A stretch of 64,000 nt of DNA, taken from NCBI GenBank assembly GCA_964252035.1, contig OZ176204.1; one strand, given 5' to 3'. The notes below the pieces were generated by a model. It ran no database searches, was not told where the DNA came from, and saw only the letters and a program-made list of their open reading frames with translations. Each line of letters starts with the position of its first letter. Within the stretch, counting starts at the first letter, position 1. Made by a program: the position numbers and the translations under genes. This document shows, one piece after another, positions 3,789-52,236 of this stretch. The DNA comes from Podarcis erhardii. Its lineage: Eukaryota.

Positions 3789-3903
3789 TGGAAAGAACTG
3801 TAGTGAGGAAGATATAGTCAGAAAAGGAGATCAAACCGCATTCTCCAAGTGCATAAAAGATGCTGTCCTCATCTGCAAACTTTTCACGTTCCTGGGAGAT
3901 TCT
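3789..3903 (-). CDS. MICU1: MICU1 exon 6: [38 protein letters not shown](T)
   Basis: Acceptor aaaatAG|AGA ATC, donor TCC A|gtaagt. 115 nt, phase 0 to 1. Confidence 0.97.
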
Positions 3904-5003
3904 CTATTTTAAGCAATCAAAAGCACGATGTTCCCAAGAGAAGAAAAATAAACTCAGTTTAAAAAGCCAGGAGTTAAAACAAGACCACATCTTTTACACT
4001 TTTAATATTGTTGCCTCTACCCATCCCTTTCCCTAAATAAACCCCCTCCTATTGTCATTCTAGATAACTTTTCCAGCCTTTAAATTTGTCAGTTGTTTCT
4101 TGAAGATTAAGATAAGAATCAAGCTTTATTCTCTATCTTACAACACACATTTCAACCCAGAAGAGTCAACTCAAATGGCACCTCACTGTTCCCTCCCACC
4201 AGCCTAATTGTTTGCAAAATGCTAAGGTATTCTAAGGGCTCTTTATTGCCATTCTTTATATAGTAGGCACAAGGAATTTCACTGTCAGTTTCGTGTTTCT
4301 GTTAAAATAAAAAAAAGTAACATATTAGTACTTGGGATTGAGGGCCCCTGCTTTGAATAAGCAAAACAACAACCCTTTCAGCAAAGTTTCTTACAGCAAC
4401 TACTTCAGTTGCAATGCAGGTTTGATACAGACCCAAGGATGCCCCTCTCTGAACCATGGTAATTAAATTGGGAGCAGGCTGCAGGAGTTATGGTAAACAA
4501 TGGTTTGGGTTACATGTACACTGATACAAACCATGGTTAATGCTAACCATGGTTCTCCTGAAACTAGAAATTGTAACAATGGCATGAAGTAGGTTTGCAG
4601 AACATAGCTTCATGAGTTAGTCTCAACTGTTGTTTGCATCACTGCACATTCAATGCAAAACCCTTGTTAACCCTAGAAATGGAAAGGAGAGGAAAAGTTG
4701 CTACAATGAGAGAAAGAAGTAGGATACACCTATGCTTCACTCCTGATCTCCGCACCATGGTTAAGATATCAACAACATCACATCTGAACTGGACTTTGGT
4801 GAAATAAAGCACACTTATGGTCATTGTACTGCAGACCACACAAGTGTTCTCCCTTTACCCTACCACACATACAAGATAAATTGCTGAACTCAAGAGCGCT
4901 AAACCATTTTGACAACTGAAGATTTAAAGGCTGAAAAGTATGCACAAAGTGGGTTAGAGGTTGGGTTCTAAATTTACTAGTTCAGAAGTATTAAAAGACA
5001 TCT

Positions 5004-5006
<3 letters not shown>

Positions 5007-5038
<32 letters not shown>
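5007..5038. repeat. (AC)16 microsatellite
   Basis: Direct reading. Confidence 0.95.
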
Positions 5039-5041
<3 letters not shown>

Positions 5042-8000
5042 AAAGAAAAGTATTAAAGGACGGAGTGGAGTTGTGGTTAATGTGTATGAAAACATGCAGG
5101 CACAGAAGCACCGAAATAGCAAGCTTAAGTTTAGGAACAATACTAGGGAACAAAGAGAGACACCACCAACAGCACACCAGGGGGCAGTTATACAACTGTC
5201 CCCTATCTGTTACCTCTGTCTAGCGAGGATCCCATCATATACAAGATAAAGGAAAGACAATTTGTTAAGCAATGACACTTAAAGCACATCGAAAGCACAT
5301 CAAAAACATTGCAGCATCTTTTGATCTGTTACTTTTGAAGACCTAAGGAAAATTTGGAGCAATTAACCAGTCCTGGTTACTGTATGTTCTTAATTAAGAA
5401 ATGTAGACAAGAGCCCCAGGAGACACCATCTCTTGAGGTTCAGATGCCTATGAAGGTTTTCATCCCAGTTCTGTCTTGCAAAGCTCATTGTATTTAAATT
5501 GGAAACAGTCCATTGAATTTAGATAAAAGTTAGGCATTATCTGGTCCGCAAAGTTACAGCGGAAAACAGTAATCACACTGATTAAAAACTGCAAGTTCTA
5601 ATTAAAGCCAAAATCTACTAGGCTTACACAAATGTGCACACAGTTCTTATTTTGTCAATGAGAGACTGCAAAAATGTCAAATGAGAAATCGTTAACAATA
5701 ATCTGAAACATTTAACAGTGCAAACACTTTTAGGGAATATCAGAATGCATCCTAATGCTAAGGGTACATTTTCAATAAACAAATGGTTTTTGCCTTACCA
5801 ATACCATTTTGATACTGCTTCGAAAACAAGTAACATTGTGAAAAAGTTTTACACGGGCTCATAATTAACTTATTAATTATGTTAATGCTGTATATTTACT
5901 TCTTTACCTGAGATAGTTTGCAGATTTTGCATCTTTTATAGCATGTATTTAAGTAACCAATGCAGTATTTATGATCCAAGTAACTCCCATTTTAACACCA
6001 AACGTTAGATGAAGACTATGTGCTATCAGTGATATATGGGAATACAATCACAGTATCACACATTTGGACTACGAGAATTTCAGGACCCTGATGTTTATCT
6101 TAAGATTAAAGTTCTGGAAACATGCATTTATGAACAAATTCCAGTGTTCTATTTTTTGGGGGGGTGGGGGAAGGTCTGGGATCTCTTTAGATAAACACAA
6201 ATGCATGGCCACATCAAGAAATCGCTGACGTTCCCCCCCTGGATGGCAGACCCCGTGCCATTTGACAAACTACTTCCAAAGCTCCCGCCTCAGTTTCAAG
6301 CAAGGTTTACCATGCAGAATGGAAGGCTGAAATTCAAGAAACTCTTGTAAGGCCCCTTGGACACATGGAACTAGTCCCAAGGTTCCTAGGATCCAAGCCA
6401 AGAATTTGACCCATCCATATTGATTAGCCATTGCTACTGCAATTCACTTTAAAGAAGGATCACGGCTGTGATTGGTTGGACCTCACATTCTTAGATGAGG
6501 CTCTGGGCAGATTTCCCACAATGCAATTAGCTTGGCATTCCCCCTCTATTTTATTATGTATCTTAAAGACTTAAGAATTTAGACAGTTATGATCCTAAAT
6601 AGACTTAACTTACCAGTCTCCTTTCCAAAAGGATTTTCTCATAAAGTGTATTTGCTGATTTAGCAAAACCATTGTGTTGTTATCGTTTTTAAAGGGGGTG
6701 TAGTTTCAAAATTAAAGCATTCAAAACACTTTCAACTTCCATGTTGCACTTCTAGAAAGTTTACATGTGAATGAAACTTAAGGGGAAACCACCTCAATAA
6801 TTATAATACACTTTCCTGTTCTGGATAACTTTTAAAATATACATAGTGAATGCGGGGTGGGGGGTGGGGTTGGTTAGAATGGGTTAAATCTATTTTACGA
6901 AACCATTAGACTAGGAAAAGAACCATATTCACCCAAAACTATTGAGAATTTTTTTAATGTCAGACTTCCACTGGAATTCATTATAGAATTTTCCCCTGCA
7001 CTGAGAGCAATAGCTATTGATAGATAATTAGTATTTAAACATGCAAGATGCACATTTGTGTTATAGTCCTGAATACCACTGAGTGAGCTTCCTATTCCCT
7101 CTGCAATTCTGTATATTAATTCTACAGGCATAAAATCAATCGCTCAAGTGCACTCCATTAAAATGCATCTTCTCTTGTGTATAAAACTGAGTTCTATGAA
7201 TCTCAACACCACCCTCCCCCAATGATATTTGCTGCTGCTCTTTCTTGCTGCACAATGCGTTGTTACATTTGAAGGAATCCAATGCAAGGTATTTAAAAAG
7301 CAAACTCAACATGCAAATGGAGATAGGGGGAAAAGCAGTAAGTGGTATTTTGTTAGTGTTAATATACCAGCCTCCTCGCCTTATCACCAGTATGAATAAT
7401 ATTAAAATAACTTCAGCACAACCCTCACATGGTATGCCCTTTTTGCAACTGGATGCTAAATTAATTTCCAGCATCCAAAGCTAATTTAGTTTATTTGTCA
7501 AAATTAAGAAAGGAGTAAACACTTTATTATATGAAGCTCCCACTTGCTTTGGATATATTGCTCCAAAAGACCCTGGCTAGGAAAGGCAGTTTAGCCTACT
7601 GAAAAATGATGAATTAATCAAATCAATAGGGCTTGTTCAGAGTGTTGATCGAAGTTCACAACTCAGATAAGGTGGAGAAAATGCACAATTCATTAGGACA
7701 GAGATTATTTACAATAACATTTCTGGAGTTGAGACATCCTGTTAGCCACAAGCATACAAGGCAAACATAGAGACTTCGGCATACTTCAGTTAAATATATA
7801 TATATATATCACCACAAGCAAGAATATGCATATACAGAAGAAGTGAACAATTCAGTTTCCACCAAATAGATTTAGTCCATCGGCTAAGTGAACAATCAAA
7901 GCAATGCTTCTTGCAGATGTTGCTGTACATGAACCATGCAGGAGAAGTGAATAACTATGACAAAACAGAACAGCCCATCTGTCAAAAGGACAGCAAGAAA

Positions 8001-8613: not shown

Positions 8614-10689
8614 GTCTGGACCATTCAAGTCAAAAGGAGTTAAGATGTTTACAGAAGGGGAAATGGATCCACCCACTCACGTACCGTATATATGGGATAT
8701 TCTGTTTTACTTCCTGTATCCCTATAGGTCTAAGGGGCATTATACCATGTAAAACCATGAGTCCATCTTGCCCTGTCTTATCTAGCTATACAGACTAGTA
8801 GAGGCAACCCAGGGTTTCACTACTTAAATATTCACTGGCCAAACAGGAGTTGGTAGAGATGCTTTATTGTTTCTATTCATGTGGCTGTTGAAAGGCAAGA
8901 TAGATAGATGTGTTCACTTGAACAAAGAAATATTTGCAGAGACAGTGTCCTCTGTATTGAGGAAGAAAATGCCTGACCTAGTTTAAAGTAGGATTGCCAC
9001 TTTTAACTCAACCAAATTAATGACAGCCAGGTCCACCACCACATGAATGGAGCAATATGAGGATGACACCCGAAGGCCTTATTGTAAAGCACAGTCAAGT
9101 GGTTTGACTTCTTAGGATTACTGAACACCGGCTAAAAAACAACAGCCCACCAATGTCTAATAGACTGGGATCTTCCTACCCAGCAATTTCAATTGTCAGA
9201 ACAGATATAACATGGTGTTATGGGCTGGATTCAACTAAACAGTTGTGCTAGTGACAGCAAGCACAAGTCCTGTTAGTGGAACAGGGCTTCACCTCCACAC
9301 TGTGCGCCCCCCAATCAGCTTGACAAGGGCTGTGGGGGTGTGGGGGATACCTCCAGAAATTGTTCCTTCTGAAAAGCAAATAATGTTTGCACTGATAGAA
9401 CACATGAATCTCCACAGCACTGTCCAATCAATAATGTACTCTGATTTATTAGTTTGTTTTTAAAACATACTTGGCAGAACACATATTTGAAGTGGAAGGC
9501 AAGACAGGTGATAGTTCTGGGGTGGGGATATCTGGCCTTCTGAGAAAACGTGAGTCAAACTTTGCCCTTAATATATGCTTTTGACTCATAGTTCCCCAAC
9601 TATAAACACACTAAAATTATAAGCAGGTGGCAATCTTAGTTCAAAAGTCACTAGCATGAATTTCAATAGCTTGGCTAAACCCAGAATAGTACTTTGCTCA
9701 GTAGCATTTGTGCACCCCAGTTAGACAATTATTTCTCTGTTAAGTCATGTAAAACTGACCATTGGTATTGCGACATGAAAGAAGGAGGTGAATGTTCAGT
9801 GATGTTATCCATGCCACTAATGCTTATGCTTCAATACCATTTTTCTGTGTGTGAAAATAAGTGATAATCTTAAGCAATCATTGCATAGCTTCCTTCTCCA
9901 AATCTAAACAATATATGCTACAGAAGTTTCCCCTCAATTCTTAATAATTTGGATCTCATTGTGCATTCTTTCAGATTAAAGAAGCTGTATAATCTTTTTT
10001 CTTTTCTTTTTTTTGCGGGGGGGATGAATGCTTAAGATTCTGTGTGTTTTGAGTTTGCTGTAATGCCATTCTCTTTCAGTCCCCGTTGACCACATCCAGT
10101 TTTCCTAACTGCACAATATTACAGAATTCGATGTTCTTTCCATTTCATTGGCAGCTCAGGCAGCTAAGCACATATTTGGGAATAGTTTGCATTCAACTTA
10201 ATGTGAATTGTTCCTGAGTAAATATGCATAGGAGTAGGCTGAAAAGATCTGGGAGAAAATAATGTATTTTAAAACGTTAGGTCTTCACTAGTTCAGTTCA
10301 GCGAAGACTTGCCAGGAAAGAGGCATCCCAAGTTTCTATAAGCGTGTTTAAGAAGAGACTGCATCTTTACCTGTAACGTCTTACTAAAGAGTGAACATCC
10401 ATTTCTGCTTGCTACTTGACTAAACACTAAATTCAGGCAAGGAAAGCAGTTATCCTTTCCCAAGAAGATGCATAACACCTTTTCAATTAATACACTGTAT
10501 CATTTAGTAATTCATACAGAGAGACACCTTAAATGTTCCTCTGGCTCCTTAGTTCTGTGATGCGATGTGATGTTTTAATGGGTGTTAATTAAAATGTGTT
10601 AGCTAAATATTTCTTTAAAAAATATCACCTTTTTGGGGGACTAGACTTTGCCTGTGCAAGTACACTTCATGGCCACACTTGGATAACTA

Positions 10690-10858: not shown

Positions 10859-11398
10859 TATGTTTATTGTGAAAGGAATGAGTCCAAGCAAAGCTCAGGC
10901 TTAGGCGCCCCCCTCACGCCCATCCAGTGTGGCCAAAGGGACACGACTGGAAAACTTTGTTTCCAGTTTCATTTAATCATGGTTTAGTGCATATGCTTTG
11001 AACCTCCATTTCCTCCAGCCAGCATGGCCAATGTTCAGGAAAGATAGGAACTGTAGTCCAAAACATCTGAAAGACATGACATCTTATTGATCTTATTGCA
11101 AAAAACAAACAAAGAAACAAAGAAACACAACCAAGTTTCAGAACCCAAAGTTTGGACCTGGTTTGTTTGGACCTAGGTTTGTCCCTATCACAACTTGCAG
11201 CCATTACATATCATGGTCTACTTGAGTGGTTTTAACTCTTTTAATTTAAATTACAAAGTTTTTAATTAATTTATCTCATTTAATTAGACAAACTTATGTT
11301 TAGACAATGGTATGTTGAGATAATCGTATCAGTTTAACAAGTCAAGATGCAAGCAAACATTTTTGCCTATGTGGCACAAACAATCGAAACCAACAAGA

Positions 11399-11400
<2 letters not shown>

Positions 11401-11447
<47 letters not shown>

Positions 11448-11732
11448 TCATTATTTGTACCCCTCCCATTTGACTGGGTTTCCCCAGCCACTCTGGGCAG
11501 CTTCCAGCATATGTAAAAACACAGTAAAACATTAATCTTTCAAAAGCTTCCCTATACAGGGCTGCCTTCAGATGTTTCCTAAATGTTATATAATGATCCT
11601 TAACATCTGATGGGAGGGCGTTCCACAGGGCAGGTGCCACTACTGAGATGGCCCTCTGCCTGGCTCCCTGTAGCTTCACTTCTCGCAGTGAGGGAACCGC
11701 CAGAAGGCCCTCAGTGCTGGATCTCAGTGTCC
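11401..11732 (-). mobile_element. L2 LINE 3' fragment with (ATT)n tail
   Basis: Translates to AISVVAPALWNALPSDV..FRKHLKAAL (L2 C-terminal motif). Tail microsatellite at 11401-11447. Confidence 0.85.
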
Positions 11733-13504
11733 AATTTATCACCTTCTCATTTTGTCAGAAACAGGAAACTACAGTTCAGAACAAGTCAGGCAATTAAGGC
11801 AACTTAATCTGAACAGGGAAATTCTCTATTCATAGTAATCTATGTGTATTTAAAGATGTTTCAAATGTGTTAAAAAAAGCTGGAGGGACAAGCAGGCCCC
11901 AGGGTTATTTTAAGAAGTTAATTAAGGAGCTTGTTGGTTTTCCAAAAATGCAAGCAAACACTGTATGTTCTGGTAGCATTTGGGTTTAGCTTAATGTATA
12001 CATGCTTATTTTGTAGAAGTTTTTAATTCTAAAAGATAACTTCTATCAGATTGTTGCTGTTATTTTTCTAAGATTGCATTTGCTGTTTTATGGTGTAATT
12101 TTGAGGTTTTAATTATTGAACTCAGCCTTGATGTTTTTTGGAAAAGCAGGATTAAAAAAATAGACCAAATAAGTAAATTCACACTCATTTAAAAATACTA
12201 CTCAGATATAGGACAGCTCTTACTAAAAGCAGCTCTTAAGGAATTCCTATGTAATTACACAATTTTTTTTAAAAAAGAAAGAATTCCAATGATCTGTGAC
12301 CAAGATATTTAATTTGGAGAGATCCACAGCAGACTCACCACATCAGGCAATGAATCCTTGCATCTAATTTTAAGAAATAAGAAATCCCAAGTCAGAGTCT
12401 CTGCTGCTAAGCACAGCTAGAGAAGCATGATGAGGTAACTGAATCCCTAGTGAATCTCAGATACCGAGGTCAGATTACATCTTGCCTATCCCTAAATTCT
12501 ACCCATAGCAACAATAAGTCCAAACTAAAAAAAAATTGAACAGGGTGGGAGCACATGGTATTTGGATCAAGTTGTGCTTTACTTTAGCTGTAAAATTATT
12601 TAAGAGAAACAAACCTTCATATGAAGTATCACAGCTTTTGAAGCCCTTTCTTCACTGATAAAAACTACTAGTTAAGCACCGGCCCAATGCAAGTCGAAAA
12701 ACTGGAACTATCCCACAAAAATGTGAATATTGATCATTTTAAGCCAGAGGGATTTGCTTATCCCACTGGAACAACAAAACTATTTCTAAAGGTATCAGAA
12801 CCCTAATCTACCTTTCCCTTTAAAAATTGAGTTCATTAAAGGTAGAACTTTAACTGGTGGTCTTCAGAGGCTAGAAAGAGAAATGTACATGTACCCACCC
12901 TTACAGCAACAGAATAAATATCCATCACCATTATTATTATTTTTAAAAAAGCTGCACCTGAAATGCAAGACTAGCATTCTACAGTCAAGAGGAAAAACGA
13001 AACAAGACACCAATGTCCCAAGACCCCTTCACAGGCAGCAGGAACCGAGCATGCAAGGGCAGAACCCTTGCAAAGAAAGCGAGAAGAGCCTCTTTAAAAA
13101 GGACAGAATATATTTTGCATTCCCCATTACAGGTCTCTCTGAGCATTCGCAAATGGTTCTTGCACTTCCGTTCAAACAAACTATTTCTCGCACCATCATA
13201 TCGCCATAGTTTATTCTTTCATTATATATCTGCTCACAATGCTGGATGCAGTTTTAAATCTAAAGTGCTTATAAAACAAAAATCCATGCAGAAAAAAGAC
13301 ATGTGGTTTCTTAACGTATTTTTATGTATCAGAGACTGGAAGGTGAATGGCAGAATTGTCACTGAGCCCTGTACCATTTCACTGGAAAGGCTACTAAATT
13401 TATCATGCCAGGCTTCCACAGCTGCTGTGCTTTGGTGTGCATTCTCTATTTGCCTAGGGGGCCATGGCTGGACCAGATCACCAGCAAACTGAGTGCAGTG
13501 TAAT

Positions 13505-14130: not shown

Positions 14131-16303
14131 GTTCCTTTTTGTTCTCATTTGGACAAAACTTTCAATTTCTGATTGCATTTCTAATTGCAATTCAGTGCTT
14201 GTCAGTACAGATATTCAGATGTCAGCTAACGAAAGAGCCTCTCATAACAGACTTCCAAAAGTCTTCAAGTGCTACAGAGGTAATGCCCTATTTGCTTAGA
14301 GCATAATCCTTCATATTAAAGAAAGAAGTTCCTCAGGGGAATGTTCTGTCACAGCTTCCTCAAGAATACACATGCTTGTCAAGAGAGGCAACTCAACACA
14401 GTGCTGCTTCAATTTGAATCTGTGCAGCCTTATTTAAGAGAATTCATCAGCATGCCGGACGCTTCTCACTTGAAAAATCCCCCAAAGGAATTAGAAGTGC
14501 ATTCCAGGCATAAACATCAGCAAATGTAAGAGTTGGAAAGCTTTATAAAATGATCACTGCATTTAATTAGAAGCATATTTTTGTCATTATCCTGCTTTTT
14601 CCTCAGTTCCCTCAGTACCTTTCAGTTAAAATCATGAGGTGAGAAGCACAGGGAATGCATTTTAATAAGCTGAAGTATTAACTGCAGTCAGACAGGCTTT
14701 AACACTCTATTTACCTAAGGGAGACCCATCCTTGACAAGTGTCTACACTATTGATTACACGGAATAAGTTATACAAAACAGGTAAATCAATATATCTGAT
14801 TAGCTCACTCCTCATTCATGCAATGTGCTACCTTTCAGAATGCACATAGCTCAGTCTCTCTTGGTCACCACCTAGCCAGGTGGGAAAGGGCCCCACTACC
14901 AGCCTCACCCATGTGATTCCAGAGTTTCTAATGTTAGTGAAATTGTGTGGATGTGACTCCTGAGATGATGAGGGAACACAGGACTTTGGGATCCTACCAT
15001 GGGATGAGAGAAGAGCAAATTTAGGGTTATACTGAATGCATCCTTGCATTTAATGTGCAGGGTGTTTTGTTTTTTTAAATGCAAATTACATAAACTGGGA
15101 GGGCTGGTTGTTTTTGAGATCACAGGCAGACATCATTTATCTGCAGTGGGAGAAAGTCCCCCATTGGCACTAGTTCAATACCAGCTTTGGAAGGGATTTT
15201 CTGCAGGACCACAGCAGAGGAAGAAAGCCTGAAATTCCCCTTCCCAATTTGCTCTGCATTATGGCACACATAATTTTGTGTTTTTTTAAACAAAAAACTG
15301 CACATTAAATTTCTAAGATGTAACACTGATCACAAATTAGCCTTCCTCAAACATCAGTTTTGGACTATCATTAGCCCCAGTCCATTCAGCTAATGACCAT
15401 GCTGACTGGGGTGGATGTTAGTTGTAATCCTACACAACCGGAGAGCACTAGATTGGTAAAGCCTGGTATAAACCAATATGCAATATGTGGGTTTGCGAGA
15501 AATGGGAATCCCTTCCCTGCCCTAGGAGGAGAGGAACAAAATGGGAGAGTGCTTGAACTGTGTACTTCTCATACAGAAGCTAATTTTCCTAATCATAGTT
15601 ATGGCTACTGATGCATGCTAACACAGCGATTATCATGTCTAGCTCAGCCCAAACACACCTCGTTTTGGAAGGCATGGTTGACTCTCTCCTGACACAGATC
15701 AGAGGTAGCTATCTCAAGGAAACTGATAATGTAAGCTGATCCTCTATCACTCAGTTATGTTGAACGGAATTCAGTCACCTGTTCCATCTTCAAGTAGTTT
15801 GTGGCAGATAGATTAAGATAGCTTCAAAGTACAGGGATATGTGGTGAGAATTAGTTTACGCATAAAATTTGGAATTTTAATGTAAATATACCCATAGGCA
15901 AATACCTCCCATTCACACAAAATATAAATTAAATATTTGTGAAAAACAGATTTGCCTCACTCTCTTATGAATAGAAAGATAATTGTTTGATTTTATTAAA
16001 CCAAAATGGAAAAAATCAACCATTGCTGCTCAGTAAAAAACGATCACAAAAAGGAGAAGAAATTTAATGTAGCACCTAGTTGGTTTACCAAACGTTAAGT
16101 AATTCTGCGTTGAATTGACTTACGGTAATACTGAACTCTTGCGACAACTTTTTTGTTGGGGAAAGTTAAGTCTCCATGTTTTTAGATTTCAAATGATGAA
16201 AGCCAACAGTTTCTTTAAGGTAATGGGGGAAATAAGAAATATATACTGTCCCTTTTAAAAAGAGGTGCACATATGGGATCTGAAGCACAAATTGGTTGAA
16301 GCA

Positions 16304-16308
16304 CATGC
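16304..16308 (-). promoter_or_regulatory. RBFOX-type GCAUG motif at +15 to +19 downstream of the micro-exon
   Basis: Minus strand gtactgacttgtcaGCATGtgctt. Downstream GCAUG is the canonical RBFOX enhancer position. Function is inferred. Confidence 0.5.
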
Positions 16309-16322
16309 TGACAAGTCAGTAC

Positions 16323-16334
16323 CTGCCAAAAATC
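16323..16334 (-). CDS. MICU1: MICU1 12-nt alternative micro-exon (DFWQ), counterpart of the MICU1.1 EFWQ micro-exon
   Basis: cctaacctttccccctctcatcAG|GAT TTT TGG CAG|GTactg. Phase 0/0, lies between exons 5 and 6, with a long pyrimidine tract and a CTAAC branch-point candidate. Confidence 0.85.
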
Positions 16335-17151
16335 CTGATGAGAGGGGGAAAGGTTAGGAAGAAAGGGAAGAAAATGAGCAAAGGTTTGGTTATAGAAACA
16401 AAAAGAAAACAAAAACAAAATAATTACAAACTGTACATCATTAGAGGAACCACAGAATAAAACAAATAAAGAAAAAAACCCAATTCATGTCTCAGGAACA
16501 AGATACTGCTGCACACCTTAGAACCAAGAAATAAAAGGAGGCACAAATGGTCAGTGAGTTACCTGCCAAAACATAATAAAAATTAAAATTAGTAGTTACT
16601 AAATTAAAGGGAAAGAGAAAGAAAGACTTCCATAATTCCATCAGTTTATGCCAACAAAACCAATATGCCACAAAGCTTTGACAAGAGCTGGGAAGTGGTA
16701 GAAGGGAGGCTGCTCACAGATATAAAACAATGTTTGGAAGAGCCTACAGCATCTTTATATTGCAAGCACAAACCCTTAACAATATATTTCCTTATGCTTA
16801 AAAAGAGATGAGTCTTCCCTGATGGGCAACATCTGTATTGGGCCTGAGGCACAAACCAATTAACCACTGCAGTTAAAAATTAATGGCTAACCCCAGGTTA
16901 AAATCTAAGATCCAAATATATCACAGGCAGCTGTCCAAGTCCTCCTGTAGGACTAACATCCTAGGAATGAGCGCTAACAGCTGAACTTGAAGTGGACTGT
17001 AAAGGGCACAGGCACGTTTTTTGTCAATCAATACTTTTTCCTGGAAGATAGAATGGCCTAGTTCACATATAAGCCAAACCATGAGCGTGAAGGGCTCCCG
17101 GACAGATTGCAGGTGCTTTGCTGCTCCTCAATCCTGGCGCTCCACTGAAGT

Positions 17152-20016: not shown

Positions 20017-20060
20017 CTTCCCATCATAGCGTTTCACCACAAACTGATCAAGTCCGAGGT
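20017..20060 (-). CDS. MICU1: MICU1 exon 5: (N)LGLDQFVVKRYDGK
   Basis: Acceptor ttgtttcttttAG|AC CTC, donor AAG|gtgaga. 44 nt, phase 1 to 0. Confidence 0.96.
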
Positions 20061-21698: not shown

Positions 21699-22174
21699 GT
21701 TGTTGTTGTTTAGTCGTTTAGTCATGTCCGACTCTTCGTGACCCCATGGACCAGAGCACGCCAGGCACTCCTGTCTTCCACTGCCTCCCGCAGTTTGGTC
21801 AGACTCATGCTGGTAGCTTCGAGAACACTGTCCAACCATCTCGTCCTCTGTTGTCCCCTTCTCCTCGTGCCCTCCATCTTTCCCAACATCAGGGTCTTTT
21901 CAAGGGAGTCTTCTCTTCTCATGAGGTGGCCAAAGTATTGGAGCCTCAGCTTCTCGATCTGTCCTTCCAATGAGCACTCAGGGCTAATTTCCTTAAGAAT
22001 GGATGTGTTTGATTTTCTTGCAGTCCACGGGACTCTCAAGAGTCTCCTCCAGCACCATAATTCAAAAGCATCAATTCTTCGGCGATCAGCCTTCTTTATG
22101 GTCCAGCTTTCACTTCCATACATCACTACTGGGAAAACCATGGCTTGCTTTCACTATACGGACCTTTGTTGGCA
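21699..22174 (-). mobile_element. RTE-BovB LINE, 5'-truncated 3' end
   Basis: ORF MVFPVVMYGSESWTIKKADRRRIDAFELWCWRRLLRVPWTAR...HGVTKSRT, a (CAA)n tail, and a perfect 11-bp TSD acatcctgttt (21688-21698 and 22175-22185). Confidence 0.95.
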
Positions 22175-26849: not shown

Positions 26850-27017
<168 letters not shown>

Positions 27018-28844
27018 CTAAAAATATAGAGAAAGAGAACATCAGATCCCCCCCATTCAAACAGCACAACGATTTGCTTTGACACGTGTAGGTAATTCCA
27101 TATACAACCCCTGCAAAATGCTAACCAATAAAACAACTTACTGTGCTACATATAGAAAAGGGAATGATTTAGTGATGGGCAGACCCAACCAAACACTTTG
27201 GTTCTTCACTTTTCTTTGGGTCCTTTATCACTATAGTCTCTTCTAAGCCCTCAAGCATGATAATTTCAACAAGTCTTTATTGGTCTGTGACCAAAATCAT
27301 TCATTCAATATAGTATACGTCAGTAAAAAGTATTTGCCTCTGTTCCAGTAGTGTGTCATTTAATAATAACCAGCAAAACTGCCATTGTGACAGGCAGGGG
27401 GTGTTGAGAAGGCTGTGTATGTCTAAATAATGGGGACACATGGCACATATACATGATACAGAAATCATCCACTTATATGGGAAACATATTGGGGGCTAAA
27501 CTTGCTCCCTCTTCCTGATGGCCACCATGTCTGGGACAGGTTGCAGGTTCACACCCATCTCAGCTGTGCCAGGATTGTGTTCACTGGCCATGCTAGAGTG
27601 TGACTGAACGGTCAGAACTAGTTATTGAAATGTTGCATTTTGAACACTAAATGTTGTGGTCCTTGCAAACACACCCCTTTATAACTCATTTAATTCCATT
27701 TATGAATGGCTTCCCATCAAATATTCTGAATCAATATAATAATAAAAATCACCAGCAATATAAGAAACAATGTCAAATATATTTAAAAAAATCAAATCCA
27801 ATTCAGGTACACAGCCTGGGATAAAAACTTTATTTATAACTATTGTTGGAAAAAAATAAAAAGGTGACTGTCTGATACATAACAGAACAGATTTCGTTAC
27901 CCAGTTCCTATACTGAGTCAAACAGATTTCCCTAAGGCCATTCATCAAATTCATGGCATGTGTGAAAGGGGTGCATCCCCCACGCAGACACATGATTACT
28001 TTGCCACATTAGGCCTTTAATCAACCAAACGGCCTTTTTTCAAAATGCTCTCACTTTCAAATGTCCATCTCCACCAGGATTTGCTTTAAGAACTCTGGTT
28101 AGGGGCAGAGTGAAAGTGCTTGACTATTTCACAGAAAGTGGGGAGGAGGGGAGTGACTATGCAAACAGGTCATCAGAAAACTACCTTCAGTCAATACTCT
28201 ACAGTATATTTTAAAGAAATTCAATTCAAGGCACATAGCAGCAGAGCAAAACCACCTGAAAGTTCAGCTTACATCAGCTTCCCATCTTTTGCATTCTTAA
28301 TAAACTGCAGCTTAAGGTCAGACAAATCAACTGAAAAAGGAAGCAAGTGCTAACAACTCTTCCAGCTGTTTATCTTAATTTAGCATGGATCTAAGCCTGG
28401 CTAAATTTTGAAAAATAGGACAGGGAAAAGCTGACACAGCAATTTCATGACCAATTGCAGTATCTGAAGTCCTCTGTAGCCTAGTTGTGCTTTCTCACTG
28501 CTGTTAAAATCCAAATCATTCCACGTTACGGATTATACACACCTTATGCAACAATTTGATTCAAAACTTTGAAGGAACATGAGTAAGAATCTGCCTGCTG
28601 TTGTCACTTACTGCAGTCGTACCCTACCTCTCCTTCAAATAACTCAGGACACTGTACATGGGACATTCTCTATTTTTTGCTCACAACACCCAGTGAGGTA
28701 GAGTTAGGCAGAGAGGTCTTGGCTGGTGCAAGGTCATCATGTGAACATCATGGCAGAGCAGGAACTTCATCCCAGATCCTTGCAGTCTAAGTGTGACACA
28801 CTATTGTCTACAATGGCTTCTTGTATGCCTGAAGGAGTGTCTCC

Positions 28845-29384
28845 ACCTCCATCATTCAGCCTGGACACTGAGATCCAGCACCAAGGGCCTTCTGGCAGTT
28901 TCCTCACTGCAAGAAATGAAGCTACAGGGAACCAGGTAGAGGGCCTTCTTGGTAGTGGCACCTACCCTATGGAACACCCTCCCATCAGATGTCAAGGAGA
29001 TTATATAACCTTTAGAAGACATGTGAAGGCAGCCCTGTATAGAGATGCTTTCTATTTTTTTATCGGTTTAATGTTTTATTATGTTTTTATATACAGTGGT
29101 ACCTCGGGTTACATACGCTTCAGGTTACAGACGCTTCAGGTTACAGACTCCGCTAACCCAGAAATATTACCTTGGGTTAAGAACTTTGCTTCAGGATGAG
29201 AACAGAAATCGTGCTCCGGCAGCGCAGCGGCAGCAGGAGGCCCCATTAGCTAAAGTTAAGAGTTTCAGGTTAAGAATGGACCTCTAGAACGAATTAAGTT
29301 CTTAACCCGAGGTACCACTGTATGTTGGAAGCTGCCCAGAGTGGCAGTCAGAAGGGTGGGGTACAAGCAATAAATTATAATAAT
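28845..29384 (+). mobile_element. L2 3' fragment interrupted by a MITE
   Basis: About 88% identical by hand alignment to the reverse complement of 11546-11732. The L2 3' sequence resumes after the MITE at 29321. Confidence 0.85.
29094..29320 (+). mobile_element. pogo/Tigger-like MITE, family A (CAGTGGTACCTCGGGTT)
   Basis: TIRs CAGTGGTACCTCGGGTT / AACCCGAGGTACCACTG and TA TSD. Confidence 0.92.
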
Positions 29385-32790: not shown

Positions 32791-32977
32791 CTTACGGTCC
32801 CGAAATCCAGACCGCTGCTTCTTCTTCTTTTCTTCGACCGGAGCATCTTCATCGCTTGACTCAACAGCTTTCCCATCATCACTTCCTTCATTCACTACTT
32901 CTTCTCTGTTCTTCATCTTCTCACCAGGCTCTGCCCTTATATCATGTTTCACAGATGATGGTGCTTCTGCATGGGCT
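32791..32977 (-). CDS. MICU1: MICU1 exon 3 (variable linker and polybasic KKKKQRSGFRDRK)
   Basis: Acceptor ttgttttctctcAG|A GCC CAT, donor AAG|gtatgt. 187 nt, phase 2 to 0. The AG|A junction restores Arg. Confidence 0.96.
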
Positions 32978-47990: not shown

Positions 47991-48216
47991 CAGTAGTACC
48001 TCGGGTTACAGACGCTTCAGGTTACAGACGCCACTAACCCAGAAATAGTACCTTGGGTTAAGAACTTTGCTTCAGGATGAGAACAGAAATTGTGCAGCGG
48101 TGGCGAAGCGGCAGCAGGAGGCCCCATTAGCTAAAGTGGTACCTCAGGTTAAGAACAGTTTCAGGTTAAGAACGGACCTCCAGAACGAATTAAGTTCTTA
48201 ACCAGAGGTACCACTG
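47991..48216 (+). mobile_element. pogo/Tigger-like MITE, family A, nested in a caatcct/aggattg element
   Basis: TIRs and TA TSD. The host element flanks read ggctgcaatcctaagca ... tgcttaggattg. Confidence 0.92.
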
Positions 48217-48922
48217 TACGTGCTTAGGATTGAACCCAGAGTCTTCCAAAATAATGAAATGAAACTGGTTTTTTTGACCAGGGTAAGAGGTGTGTTTAAA
48301 TATGATAAATTTGGGCAGTGATTTTTCCAAGTGGATTACAGCAAAGAGAAAGTGAGGAGCAGTGAAATAGCACCTTAGTCCTTTCCCAACCTCAAATAAA
48401 GGGCCACATCTTCCCCTTCCACTGCCAGAGATATCATTGCTTCCACAACTCTTCTCTAAGTTGGAAACTGGGACTAGGTAGCATCTCTGCAGGCAGGGAA
48501 GCATATTTGGCTCGAAGATGCCTGTGGCATTAACAATAAGCAAATTGCTTCCCAGTCAAGTTACAGAAGGAGCTATTTCCAAGAAAAACCAGCAACTGTA
48601 CTTAGCCACTATGCAGGTCAGAGCCAACATGCTGCTTCAAGTGGTTTCAGAATACTATACAAGAGGATAAGAAAATGCCCTTAAAACCATTCAAGCATAT
48701 TTGACAAGAGTTTCCTTCGGCTTGCCCAACTCAATGACGAAAATACACTGGACATAAAGAAGTGACTGAAAGATTAGCACTTCAGATATGTAGCCCATAT
48801 TATCAGTGCCATTCTGCACATGGGACAAGCCTCCTATACCTTTTCTTTGTCACACGAAAAGGGAGAAGTATGCAATAGTCTTGCAGTTGTGACTTCTCTC
48901 CTTTATGCAGCTAACTAATAAG

Positions 48923-49115
48923 CAGTGGCGGAGATTCATGCTCCAGCACCAGGGGGCGGAGAGCAGGCGGGGGTGGGGCTGGTGTGCGCCCCGGGGGCGT
49001 GGTGCATGTCCTGGGGCACCCAGCGCAGGCAGGGGGGCAGGCGCGATGGCACCCCACCGGGATCGCGCTGCCAGGGGCGGTGCACTCCCCCTGCACTCCT
49101 CTTCCTTCGGCAGTG
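48923..49115. mobile_element. GC/CpG-rich hAT-like MITE
   Basis: Perfect 8-bp TSD ctaataag (48915-48922 and 49116-49123) and imperfect TIRs CAGTGGCGGAG / cttcggcagtg. Confidence 0.8.
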
Positions 49116-49544
49116 CTAATAAGATTGCTTATTACACAGGTAGTCTGGCAACAGATGGCCAGTCTTGATGCATTTTTTAAAAAATTATCAACTCTGAAAT
49201 ATATCTTCTTCAAAGCTTTTGAACTATACATGCTGCTTTTGTGTTTATTAGCATAAAATAGCTCTTTTTTATTTATTTTAAAAAAGCACACCATACAGCC
49301 AGCTTGGAAAGGGTGGTAATTGAAGGGATGTGGAGCACAACCCTGGTAGCTACTGGACCTGCTCCTTTCTTTGTCAGCTCAAATAGAGCAAAAAGAATGG
49401 CAGCTGCACTGCGCAAGCAAGGAGCAAGATTTGTTCAAAATCAGCTTAATGGCCACTACAAACAGTAATTTGTTATCAAAGCAACAGCCTGAAGTTTAGT
49501 TTTGAAAGTCAAAGAGAGCTGCAATGGCAGTTCAAAGCACTTAC

Positions 49545-49705
49545 CTTTTCCAAAGAAGTCCAGCACTTGCTGTTACAGCTGTTGTCCCTACAAAAGCCAC
49601 CATCATGAGCCTACGCCGGCCGTGGAGGGAATGCGCTGTTCCATAGTGACGTCTAGAAATGGCAGCTAAACCTGCTGCGGCAGGGAGAAGGCGGAAGCGC
49701 AACAT
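49545..49705 (-). CDS. MICU1: MICU1 exon 2 (start codon, mitochondrial targeting peptide and TM segment): MLRFRLLPAAAGLAAISRRHYGTAHSLHGRRRLMMVAFVGTTAVTASAGLLWK(R)
   Basis: Pyrimidine tract tctttgcttttctccccAG, 1 nt of UTR (G at 49706), then ATG at 49705-49703. Donor AAAAG|gtaagt at 49544. 161 coding nt, phase 2. Confidence 0.96.
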
Positions 49706-49977
49706 CCTGGGGAGAAAAGCAAAGAGTGCAATGAGAAGGGAACCACGGCGAGAGCTGAATATTTGCATTTTAACTGTCTAATCAGGTGTCTTTCAGGGGA
49801 CAGGGGACCACATGCATGTGCAGCCACTAAGTTCAGGAGTGGGGAACCTGTAATCCTCTAGATATTTCTTAGTTTCAACTTCCATCAGCCCCAGCCAGCA
49901 TAGCCAAATGTCAGGGATGATGGGTGTTGTAGTCCAACAGAATGTGGAGGGCCATCACCTACGCTAGGTCGTAAACA

Positions 49978-50523
49978 GGCCAAAATGGGGAAGCTGAACT
50001 GCAAGTCACAACAGCAGCGGGACAAGGGTTGGACGGAAAACTGGGGGAGATCCAGAAGAGGAGGGAATCCTGCAGCAAAACCAGTCAGAGGCTGAGGTCT
50101 GGGACGTAGATCCCATCTAAAAGATGGAGGCTGGACTGAGGATGTAGGCAATGCTGCTTCAAAGGATAATGCTGACAAGCAAGGAGAGGAGGAGCAGGAA
50201 GGTAGACTGACAAGCTTCTCCACATGGGGCAAGGCCAAGAAGCCACAGAAAGACTAGAGCCTACTAACACAGAACCTGGACCTGGAAGCATGAATGGGTG
50301 GGCAGGCAGGACAGCACGGCTTCTATAGCCTCTATAGCCTCAGAGAGGGGAAGCCAGTGGTTCACAGCCTAAGAGGATCCCAGCTTGAATCTTGGCATTA
50401 TGAATTCTTAGCCTACATTGCACAGGTGCTGGTTGCAGCATCTGCTATGAAGTCAGAAATTCTGACCCTAATCTAGTGGCACACATTTCTGTCTAGCACT
50501 CGTGTCAGGACCCTGCTATTACA
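49978..50523 (+). mobile_element. LTR-like element
   Basis: Purine-rich block with abrupt boundaries ending ...ccctgctattaca. Composition similar to the 46030 element. Confidence 0.35.
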
Positions 50524-51709: not shown

Positions 51710-52236
51710 TTTTTATTTATACCCCACCCTCCCCAGCCAAGGCCGGGCTCAGAGCGGCTTACAAGCAATAATAAAAACAAGTTGAATGATTACAACTTAA
51801 AAACAACATTAAAATACAACATTAAAATATTTAAACATTAAAATATTAAAATATAGCCTCGTCGTAGGAGGAGAAGGAAAGGAAAAAAGAAAGAGAGGGA
51901 GGGAATCAAATTGGCTCCAAGCCAAAGGCCAGGCGGAACAACTCCGTCTTACAGGCCCTGCGGAAAGAAATCAGATCCTGCAGGGCCCTGGTCTCATGAG
52001 GCAGAGAGTTCCACCAGGCCGGAGCCAGAGTTGAAAAGGCCCTGGCTCTGGTTGAAGCCAATCTAACTTCCTTAGGGCCCGAGACCACTAGGGTGTTGCT
52101 ATTTATGGACCTTGAGGCTCTCCGTGGGGCATACCGGGAGAGGCGGTCTCGTAGGTACGAGGGTCCTAGGCCGTGAAGGGCTTTAAAGGTCAAAAGCAGC
52201 AAATATCAAATCCAAACTCTTCTTCTTCTTCTTCTT
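51445..52236 (+). mobile_element. Squam3-type tRNA-derived SINE split by an L2 insertion
   Basis: Head ggagagctagcgtggtgtagtggttaagagc (A box), body to aaagcggg at 51660. The tail caaatccaaactc(ttc)n resumes at 52207. Confidence 0.85.
51665..52202 (-). mobile_element. L2 LINE 3' fragment, different subfamily from the 11401 copy
   Basis: ORF LLLTFKALHGLGPSYLRDRL...RAFSTLAPAWWNSLP...FRRACKTELF, (ATT)15 tail, flanked by atat at 51661-51664 and 52203-52206. Confidence 0.92.

What the first reader, a model, noticed from the sequence alone, without database searches (positions are those of the whole stretch)
16323..16334. Reptile counterpart of the muscle MICU1.1 micro-exon (DFWQ)
Seen: a 12-nt phase-0 exon GAT TTT TGG CAG with canonical AG/GT, inside the 16-kb intron between exons 5 and 6 and invisible to the ORF track as an exon. 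Established: mammalian skeletal muscle includes a 12-nt micro-exon (EFWQ) at this junction, giving MICU1.1, which has higher Ca2+ affinity and boosts mitochondrial Ca2+ uptake. Inference: the switch is at least as old as the amniote ancestor, with a conservative E>D change. Gene models for non-model genomes often miss such exons. It matters for ectotherm muscle energetics.
Basis: partly seen in the sequence, partly recalled or inferred. Interest (0 to 1): 0.8.

Follow-up and report, generated by a model that had tools for sequence, protein, structure and literature searches.

The report
Lizard MICU1 muscle-type micro-exon, already known
The 12-base DFWQ segment is a genuine, deeply conserved alternative micro-exon of the lizard MICU1 gene (the counterpart of the mammalian MICU1.1 exon), but the same exon is already annotated in other lizards, snakes, turtles, birds, frogs and fish, so it is an ordinary annotation gap, not a discovery.

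Summary
On the minus strand, 16334..16323 reads GATTTTTGGCAG (DFWQ) between AG and GT. It is in phase 0 and lies in the 16,113-nt MICU1 intron between the exon ending ..YDGK and the exon starting RISQERE.

The bare form is trivial: 47 open AG-N12-GT sites occur in this intron. A [DE]FWQ site with AG/GT is expected only 6e-5 times, and this site ranks first of the 47 for both splice signals.

Its flanks are 87-92% identical to two snakes, 72-73% to zebra finch and 61-67% to Xenopus, against about 50% in control intron. A GCATG (RBFOX motif) sits 15-22 nt downstream in all six species compared.

DFWQ isoforms are already annotated in Lacerta agilis, Anolis, Pogona, Sceloporus, Sphaerodactylus and Crotalus, and in turtles, birds, frogs, fish and many mammals. 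So D is the widespread, probably ancestral residue and mouse E looks derived. The exon predates amniotes.

The window matches Podarcis MICU1 at 209/209 residues. The Podarcis RefSeq protein seen here lacks the exon, so this is a local annotation gap.

A second micro-exon (TE, 5219..5214) is also present and conserved. Tissue-specific inclusion in this lizard was not testable.

The parts
16323..16334 (-). MICU1 micro-exon 5' (12 nt, GATTTTTGGCAG = DFWQ), phase 0
   Evidence: Read directly. It is the only [DE]FWQ 12-mer in the window. It is identical in Protobothrops and Python, and differs only at synonymous sites in finch, Xenopus and Stegastes. The same insert is annotated in many vertebrate MICU1 proteins.
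16335..16395 (-). 3' splice region: AG (16336-16335), polypyrimidine tract, CTAAC branch site (16357-16353, branch A 16354)
   Evidence: 17 of 20 pyrimidines, ranked first of 47 candidates. The 60 nt upstream are 89-92% identical to snakes, 73% to finch and 61% to Xenopus, against 51-58% in control intron.
16243..16322 (-). 5' splice site GT (16322-16321; CAG|GTACTG) and conserved downstream intron, including GCATG (16308..16304, +15), a candidate RBFOX binding site
   Evidence: GCATG lies at +15 in lizard, both snakes and finch, at +16 in Xenopus and at +22 in Stegastes. The 80 nt downstream are 87% identical to snakes, 72% to finch and 67% to Xenopus. RBFOX2 dependence of the mouse exon is reported in PMC8909990.
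16240..16538 (-). Whole conserved block around the micro-exon (lizard versus pit viper)
   Evidence: blastn of intron 5 against Protobothrops intron 5 gives 303 nt at 79.5%, E 7e-65. Against Python it gives 331 nt at 80.7%. It is one of the two strongest intronic blocks.
20017..20060 (-). MICU1 exon 5 (..N-LGLDQFVVKRYDGK), upstream constitutive exon
3789..3903 (-). MICU1 exon 6 ([38 protein letters not shown]), downstream constitutive exon
   Evidence: It aligns to human MICU1 residues 180-217 of PDB 6k7y_I at E 3e-17.
5214..5219 (-). Second micro-exon 5'' (6 nt, ACAGAG = TE), with AG at 5221-5220 and GT at 5213-5212
   Evidence: It is the only AG-N6-GT in the intron that encodes TE. Its flanks are near-identical in snakes, finch and Xenopus: 60 nt at 90% to Xenopus and 106 nt at 85% to finch. 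The Protobothrops gene model P0009 uses this exon. The human 5'' exon (TE) is described in PMC8909990.
26855..27017 (-). MICU1 exon 4 ([16 protein letters not shown]...NEKQPE)
   Evidence: It was used as the query, which gave 319 hits at E<=1e-10.
32791..32977 (-). MICU1 exon 3 (AHAEAPSS...KKKKQRSGFRDRK)
49545..49707 (-). MICU1 exon 2, with the start codon at 49705 (MLRFRLLPAAAG...LLWKR)
   Evidence: The 5' boundary is approximate (cag|G before the ATG).

Best explanation
The segment is the lizard orthologue of MICU1 alternative micro-exon 5'. MICU1 is the Ca2+-sensing regulator of the mitochondrial calcium uniporter.

When the exon is spliced in between exon 5 (..YDGK) and exon 6 (RISQERE..), it adds DFWQ. 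The product is the MICU1.1-type isoform. In mouse this isoform binds Ca2+ more tightly and opens the uniporter at lower Ca2+.

A second 6-nt micro-exon (TE) lies 11.1 kb further down the same intron. The two together allow four isoforms: none, DFWQ, TE and DFWQTE. Three of these plus the plain form are annotated in the closely related Lacerta agilis and in Crotalus tigris.

Shown here:
- the exon, its reading frame and its strong splice signals;
- orthology, from conserved flanking intron across squamates, a bird, a frog and a fish;
- its use in public gene models of many vertebrates, including six squamate genera.

Inferred:
- inclusion is regulated rather than constitutive, because the annotated Podarcis protein skips it;
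- RBFOX proteins binding the conserved GCAUG about 15 nt downstream promote inclusion in muscle and neurons, as RBFOX2 does for the mouse exon;
- DFWQ has the same biochemical effect as mouse EFWQ.

An AlphaFold model of the Lacerta DFWQ isoform places the insert at the N-terminal start of the helix that opens exon 6. Confidence there is only moderate (pLDDT about 63).
For: Sequence and frame.

Non-chance: an expected 6e-5 occurrences per intron, and rank 1 of 47 for both splice signals.

Host gene is MICU1: PDB hits at E 1e-17, and 209/209 identity to Podarcis MICU1.

Conservation:
- Lizard versus Xenopus intron 5 gives only two intronic HSPs, the two micro-exon blocks. Lizard versus finch gives four, including both.
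- Flank identity is 87-92% to snakes, 72-73% to finch and 61-67% to Xenopus, against 48-58% in controls.
- Exon differences between species are all synonymous.

Annotated use: among the top 120 relatives, DFWQ appears 38 times, DFWQTE 34 times and TE 28 times. The insert is present in Anolis A0A803TPS8 (..YDGK-DFWQ-RISQ..), Lacerta agilis X1/X2/X3, Sceloporus X3, Pogona X1, Sphaerodactylus X1/X2 and Crotalus tigris X1/X2.

Regulation: GCATG lies at +15 to +22 in six species, and RBFOX2 knock-down abolishes MICU1.1 in C2C12 cells (PMC8909990).

Function of the mammalian isoform: PMC8909990, PMC7575740 and PMC8224590.

Structure.
Against: The Logan-derived fragments retrieved with the insert looked mammalian, and the one intron-retaining DFWQ product was a chicken UniRef entry.

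The Podarcis RefSeq protein lacks the exon. That is compatible with weak or tissue-restricted inclusion, but also with simple omission from the model.

The 5' splice site is only moderate: it mismatches the consensus at +4 to +6.

The isoforms in other reptiles are computational gene models, and I could not inspect their RNA support.

The effect of D versus E on Ca2+ affinity is unknown. How EFWQ acts structurally is stated to be unresolved (PMC7575740).
Confidence: 0.88

Rival explanations
1. It is a conserved relic. The sequence is orthologous to the micro-exon but is no longer spliced into mRNA in this lizard lineage, as the single micro-exon-less Podarcis RefSeq protein might suggest.
For: The Podarcis muralis/raffonei and Zootoca vivipara proteins retrieved lack both inserts. 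No squamate transcript contigs with the insert were found.
Against: AG, GT, the polypyrimidine tract, the branch site, the reading frame and the downstream GCATG are all intact. They are identical or nearly identical to those of snakes whose models use the exon. Lacerta agilis, at 208/209 residues identical, has X1/X2 isoforms with DFWQ. A disused 12-nt exon would not keep 87-92% flank identity over squamate divergence.
Confidence: 0.05
2. It is a conserved non-coding intronic element, such as an enhancer or a splicing silencer, that only by accident reads as an exon.
For: Other blocks of the same intron are conserved without being known exons, for example 13134..12856.
Against: Substitutions inside the 12 nt are only synonymous, while the flanks drift. 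The splice dinucleotides are invariant in six species. The exon is incorporated in dozens of independent vertebrate protein records. Retrieved products also read ..DGK-DFWQ or ..DGK-EFWQ and then continue into the downstream intron (P0366 chicken, P0379, P0386).
Confidence: 0.02
3. It is a chance AG-N12-GT match with no biological meaning.
For: 47 open AG-N12-GT sites exist in this intron.
Against: The expected number of [DE]FWQ sites with AG/GT is 6e-5. The site ranks first for both splice signals. It coincides with the conservation peak.
Confidence: 0.001

Closest known systems
Mouse/human MICU1 exon 5' (MICU1.1 isoform; Vecellio Reane et al. 2016 Mol Cell; PMC8909990)
   Same: Same gene, same junction (after ..DGK and before [KR]ISQERE, about aa 180), same 12-nt length and phase 0, and the same FWQ core. 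There is a GCAUG downstream, consistent with the RBFOX2 dependence shown in C2C12 cells.
   Different: The first residue is D (GAT) rather than the E reported for mouse. Tissue pattern and biochemical effect are untested in reptiles.
Annotated DFWQ isoforms of other sauropsids (Lacerta agilis X1/X2, Anolis carolinensis A0A803TPS8, Sceloporus undulatus X3, Pogona vitticeps X1, Sphaerodactylus townsendi X1/X2, Crotalus tigris X1/X2, Dermochelys X2, Gallus gallus X4)
   Same: The inserted peptide is identical, and in squamates so are the flanking residues (..FVVKRYDGK-DFWQ-(TE)[14 protein letters not shown]..).
   Different: None at the protein level. The Podarcis protein record retrieved here simply lacks the isoform.
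Human MICU1 exon 5'' (6 nt, TE; MICU1.2 and MICU1.3; PMC8909990)
   Same: The window holds AG|ACAGAG|GT at 5219..5214 in the same intron, downstream of exon 5'. It encodes TE and has strongly conserved flanks.
   Different: It is not the finding itself.
Zebrafish micu1 conserved microexons (DreEX0046514, DreEX6103867; PMC13281805)
   Same: Two micro-exons in micu1 are described as conserved, and a teleost locus (Stegastes) shows the same DFWQ and TE layout.
   Different: In zebrafish neurons their inclusion depends on srrm3. Here no conserved UGC lies close to the 3' splice site, and a conserved RBFOX motif is the clearest cis signal.

Membership tests
MICU1 exon 5' micro-exon (MICU1.1-type isoform) | The host gene is the MICU1 orthologue | tested here: met
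   Five exons in the window translate to MICU1. They are 209/209 identical to the Podarcis MICU1 RefSeq protein. Exon 6 matches human MICU1 PDB chains at E 1e-17.
MICU1 exon 5' micro-exon (MICU1.1-type isoform) | Lies in the intron between the exon ending ..DGK and the exon beginning [KR]ISQERE (about aa 180) | tested here: met
   Exon 5 ends at 20017 and exon 6 starts at 3903. The micro-exon is at 16334..16323, 3,682 nt into the intron.
MICU1 exon 5' micro-exon (MICU1.1-type isoform) | 12 nt, phase 0, encoding xFWQ | tested here: met
   GAT TTT TGG CAG = DFWQ. Mouse has EFWQ (PMC8909990). DFWQ is the commonest annotated form.
MICU1 exon 5' micro-exon (MICU1.1-type isoform) | Functional splice signals | tested here: met
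   AG and GT are present. The tract has 17 of 20 pyrimidines, a CTAAC branch site lies at about -20, and the 5' splice site matches 6 of 9. The site ranks 1 of 47 candidates. This is a consensus comparison only, not a splicing assay.
MICU1 exon 5' micro-exon (MICU1.1-type isoform) | Orthology shown by conserved flanking intron | tested here: met
   87-92% (snakes), 72-73% (finch) and 61-67% (Xenopus), against about 50% in control intron.
MICU1 exon 5' micro-exon (MICU1.1-type isoform) | RBFOX2-dependent inclusion | tested here: inconclusive
   A GCATG is conserved at +15 to +22 in six species, which is consistent with RBFOX control. Binding and dependence cannot be tested with these tools.
MICU1 exon 5' micro-exon (MICU1.1-type isoform) | Included in mRNA, predominantly in skeletal muscle and also in brain | not testable with these tools
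   No RNA data for this species were available. The only evidence is computational isoforms in related squamates.
MICU1 exon 5' micro-exon (MICU1.1-type isoform) | Raises the Ca2+ affinity of MICU1 and lowers the uniporter activation threshold | not testable with these tools
   This is known for the mouse EFWQ form only (PMC8909990, PMC7575740).
MICU1 exon 5'' micro-exon (TE; MICU1.2/1.3) | 6-nt exon encoding TE between exon 5' and exon 6, with conserved flanks | tested here: met
   AG|ACAGAG|GT at 5219..5214. It is the only TE-coding AG-N6-GT in the intron. Its flanks are conserved to Xenopus (60 nt at 90%). It is used in the Protobothrops model P0009.
SRRM3/SRRM4 (eMIC)-dependent neural microexon | UGC motif close upstream of the 3' splice site | tested here: inconclusive
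   The nearest TGC is at -46. It is present in squamates but not in finch. Zebrafish micu1 microexons are srrm3-dependent (PMC13281805). The typical UGC position is recalled from my own knowledge, not checked here.

The most novel reading that the evidence does not exclude
The DFWQ exon, the TE exon and their conserved intronic flanks, with a position-fixed GCAUG, may form one splicing switch at least as old as bony vertebrates.

On this reading D is the ancestral residue and the E studied in mouse is a derived substitution. In lizards the DFWQ isoform would be the predominant skeletal-muscle MICU1, as MICU1.1 is in mouse.

The open literature searched here never mentions DFWQ. The D/E polarity and the reptile tissue pattern therefore appear undescribed, although the exon itself is described as well conserved.
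Probability: 0.5. Interest if true: 0.25.

Novelty: already known. Interest (0 to 1): 0.14.

Why it matters
The finding has little weight as a discovery. MICU1.1 is described as 'well-conserved among species' (PMC8224590), and the exon is already in gene models of all vertebrate classes sampled.

Three practical points remain:
- The Podarcis MICU1 model seen here lacks two conserved micro-exons. It could be corrected by adding up to three isoforms.
- The residue studied in mouse (E) is the minority state. Biochemical conclusions about the insert would be better tested on DFWQ too.
- The tightly conserved flanks, with a fixed GCAUG, give a clean comparative handle on how a 12-nt exon is recognised.

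Tried and rejected
- A Markov-simulation estimate of chance timed out. It was replaced by an analytical expectation.
The 12-mer is preceded by TT, not AG. The nearest upstream AG opens on an in-frame TAA. The local alignment of the two 260-nt regions is no better than shuffles (74 of 500 reach its score). The motif is absent from Protobothrops, and the region is not aligned to either snake. I rejected it as a second exon or a duplication.
- Fetching the Crotalus tigris locus failed because the gene range is 181 kb. Gallus X4 and Coturnix X2 are not on record, because only the longest product of a gene is indexed. Protobothrops, Python, Taeniopygia, Xenopus and Stegastes loci were used instead.
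- A search for squamate transcript contigs carrying the insert returned none.
- A search for a lizard counterpart of the archosaur 22-aa alternative exon (Gallus X1, Crocodylus X3) gave only weak matches, best E 0.2.
- A structural comparison with the insert-less isoform and a fold search were not run. The model around the insert is of only moderate confidence, so they were unlikely to settle the mechanism.

Full report
**Observation**

The + strand at 16323..16334 reads CTGCCAAAAATC. On the minus strand this is GATTTTTGGCAG, coding D-F-W-Q. It is preceded by AG (16336-16335) and followed by GT (16322-16321).

The window carries the 5' half of a MICU1 gene on the minus strand:
- exon 2, with the ATG at 49705;
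- exon 3, 32977..32791;
- exon 4, 27017..26855;
- exon 5, 20060..20017, ending ..YDGK;
- exon 6, 3903..3789, starting RISQERE.

Exon 6 aligns to residues 180-217 of full-length human MICU1 in the PDB at E 3e-17. Intron 5 is 16,113 nt and both of its junctions are phase 0, so a 12-nt insert preserves the frame.

**Is it more than chance?**

The bare form is not. The intron holds 55 AG-N12-GT sites, and 47 of them have no in-frame stop. The content is what matters. A 12-mer coding [DE]FWQ is expected 0.017 times in this intron, and 6e-5 times with the AG/GT flanks. It occurs exactly once in the 64-kb window.

Among the 47 open candidates this site ranks first for both signals:
- polypyrimidine content: 17 of the 20 bases before the AG;
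- 5' splice-site match: CAG|GTACTG, 6 of 9.

A consensus CTAAC branch site lies about 20 nt upstream.

**Orthology and conservation**

I fetched MICU1 loci from five species:
- L001, Protobothrops mucrosquamatus;
- L005, Python bivittatus;
- L002, Taeniopygia guttata;
- L004, Xenopus laevis;
- L003, Stegastes partitus.

Every one has AG|GAYTTYTGGCAG|GTA in the same intron. The differences inside the exon are all synonymous (GAT/GAC, TTT/TTC).

blastn of the lizard intron against each orthologous intron gives the following:

| Comparison | Intronic HSPs | Micro-exon block |
|---|---|---|
| Lizard vs snakes | a handful | 16538..16240; 303 nt at 79.5% (Protobothrops), 331 nt at 80.7% (Python) |
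| Lizard vs finch | four, including both micro-exon blocks | 164 nt at 75.6% |
| Lizard vs Xenopus | two: the DFWQ block and the second micro-exon block | 114 nt at 72% |

Against the snakes, the DFWQ block and the block around the second micro-exon are the two strongest intronic matches.

Flank identity to the window, with control intron stretches for comparison:

| Species | 60 nt upstream | 80 nt downstream | Controls |
|---|---|---|---|
| Protobothrops | 89% | 87% | 53-54% |
| Python | 92% | 87% | 53-58% |
| Taeniopygia | 73% | 72% | 48-53% |
| Xenopus | 61% | 67% | 51-52% |

**Regulatory signal**

A GCATG lies 15 nt downstream of the exon in the lizard, both snakes and the finch. It lies at +16 in Xenopus and at +22 in Stegastes. 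In C2C12 myotubes, RBFOX2 silencing completely blocks production of MICU1.1 (PMC8909990).

From my own knowledge, RBFOX sites just downstream of an alternative exon generally promote its inclusion. I therefore infer RBFOX-driven inclusion in muscle and neurons. This is an inference from a conserved motif, not a demonstration.

**What is already known**

The literature describes the following:
- exon 5' encodes EFWQ after aa 181 and is 'highly conserved' (PMC8909990);
- zebrafish micu1 carries two 'conserved microexons' that depend on srrm3 in neurons (PMC13281805).

Public protein records settle the novelty question. Among the top 120 relatives of a DFWQ-containing query, the insert at this junction is DFWQ in 38, DFWQTE in 34 and TE in 28. 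The query itself carried D, so the ranking favours D-bearing hits. The DFWQ records span teleosts, gar, bowfin, coelacanth, Xenopus, Bufo, turtles, birds, squamates, echidna, bats, pangolin, pig, guinea pig, marmot, a capuchin and carnivores.

In squamates the insert is annotated in these records:
- Anolis carolinensis UniProt A0A803TPS8, which reads ..YDGK-DFWQ-RISQ.., exactly the predicted junction;
- Lacerta agilis X1 (DFWQTE), X2 (DFWQ) and X3 (TE);
- Sceloporus undulatus X3;
- Pogona vitticeps X1;
- Sphaerodactylus townsendi X1/X2;
- Crotalus tigris X1/X2.

First, D is the widespread state and by parsimony the ancestral one, so the E reported for mouse looks derived rather than the reverse. 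Second, the exon dates at least to the bony-vertebrate ancestor, not merely the amniote ancestor. No paper in the searched library mentions DFWQ with MICU1, so this polarity seems not to have been remarked on. It is a minor point.

**Which genome, and is the exon annotated there?**

The five exons compared are 209/209 identical to the RefSeq protein shared by Podarcis muralis and P. raffonei. They are 208/209 identical to Lacerta agilis. The window is therefore from a Podarcis-like lacertid.

That Podarcis protein reads ..YDGK-RISQ.. and its name carries no 'isoform' label. By NCBI naming convention (my own knowledge) this suggests a single annotated product.

**Companion micro-exon**

Human MICU1 also has a 6-nt exon 5'' encoding TE, which gives MICU1.2 and MICU1.3. 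The lizard intron has exactly one AG-N6-GT that codes TE. It is AG|ACAGAG|GT at 5219..5214, 11.1 kb downstream of the DFWQ exon and 1.3 kb upstream of exon 6.

Its flanks are almost invariant between lizard, snakes, finch and Xenopus: 60 nt at 90% to Xenopus and 106 nt at 85% to finch. The Protobothrops gene model P0009 uses it.

**Mechanism**

- Shown: a frame-preserving, splice-competent, orthologous micro-exon that many vertebrate gene models include.
- Taken from the literature: the mammalian insert raises the Ca2+ affinity of MICU1 and lowers the activation threshold of the uniporter. How it does so is stated to be unresolved (PMC7575740).
- Inferred: the lizard DFWQ isoform behaves the same way and is included under RBFOX control.

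An AlphaFold2 model of Lacerta agilis X2 (38-sequence alignment, mean pLDDT 68) places DFWQ at residues 186-189. That is the N-terminal start of helix 185-198, directly after the short strand FVVK. Local pLDDT is about 63, so this is only a weak indication that the insert extends that helix by about one turn.

**Not testable here**

I could not test transcript inclusion or tissue specificity in this lizard, RBFOX dependence, or the biochemical effect of D versus E.

**Verdict**

The exon is already known and widely annotated, also in close relatives. The proposed E>D direction and the 'amniote' age are not supported. Interest is low.

Noticed in passing
window 5214..5219 (minus strand), flanks 5328..4905: A second MICU1 micro-exon (6 nt, ACAGAG = TE) with AG/GT, the counterpart of human exon 5''. 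Its flanks are near-identical in snakes, finch and Xenopus, and a Protobothrops gene model uses it. The Podarcis protein record seen here lacks it too.
   Followed up: yes
It has no AG acceptor, the nearest upstream AG opens on an in-frame TAA, it is absent from Protobothrops and the region does not align to either snake, and the surrounding similarity is no better than shuffles. It is probably a chance or lineage-specific pseudo-site.
   Followed up: yes
window 12856..13134 (minus strand): A conserved intronic block with no evident exon: 75-76% identity to both snakes and 68% to finch. It contains invariant stretches (CTGCTGCCTG, TGCATTTCAGGTGC, ATTTCTCTTTC) and a TGCATG in lizard and finch. 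It could be a distal splicing or transcriptional regulatory element. Smaller conserved blocks lie at 14642..14483 and 10179..9752.
   Followed up: partly
L002:34082 (zebra finch) and proteins P0348, P0297: Archosaurs have a further 22-aa alternative exon at the same junction (Gallus X1 IRVKFSSKLLAELIPNLQPPAM, and Crocodylus X3), about 330 nt upstream of the TE exon. No convincing counterpart exists in the lizard intron (best tblastn E 0.2).
   Followed up: partly
proteins P0444, P0446, P0455, P0456: The Podarcis muralis/raffonei and Zootoca vivipara MICU1 records carry neither micro-exon. Lacerta agilis, at 208/209 residues identical, has isoforms with DFWQTE, DFWQ and TE. Annotation is therefore inconsistent within one lizard family.
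   Followed up: partly
window 21722..22141 (minus strand); 11329..11742 (-), 28726..29199 (+), 51906..52202 (-): Interspersed-repeat ORFs lie inside MICU1 introns. One is a fragment that looks derived from a LINE reverse transcriptase (..YGSESWTIKKADRRRIDAFELWCWRRLLRVPWTARKSN..). Three others are copies of a repeat translating to ..APALWNALP..VK... These are judged by eye only.
   Followed up: no
window ~48000..50500: G+C rises to 0.47 around the ATG exon of MICU1 (49705). An acceptor-like cag|G lies just before the ATG, which suggests a non-coding exon 1 further upstream, as in human.
   Followed up: no
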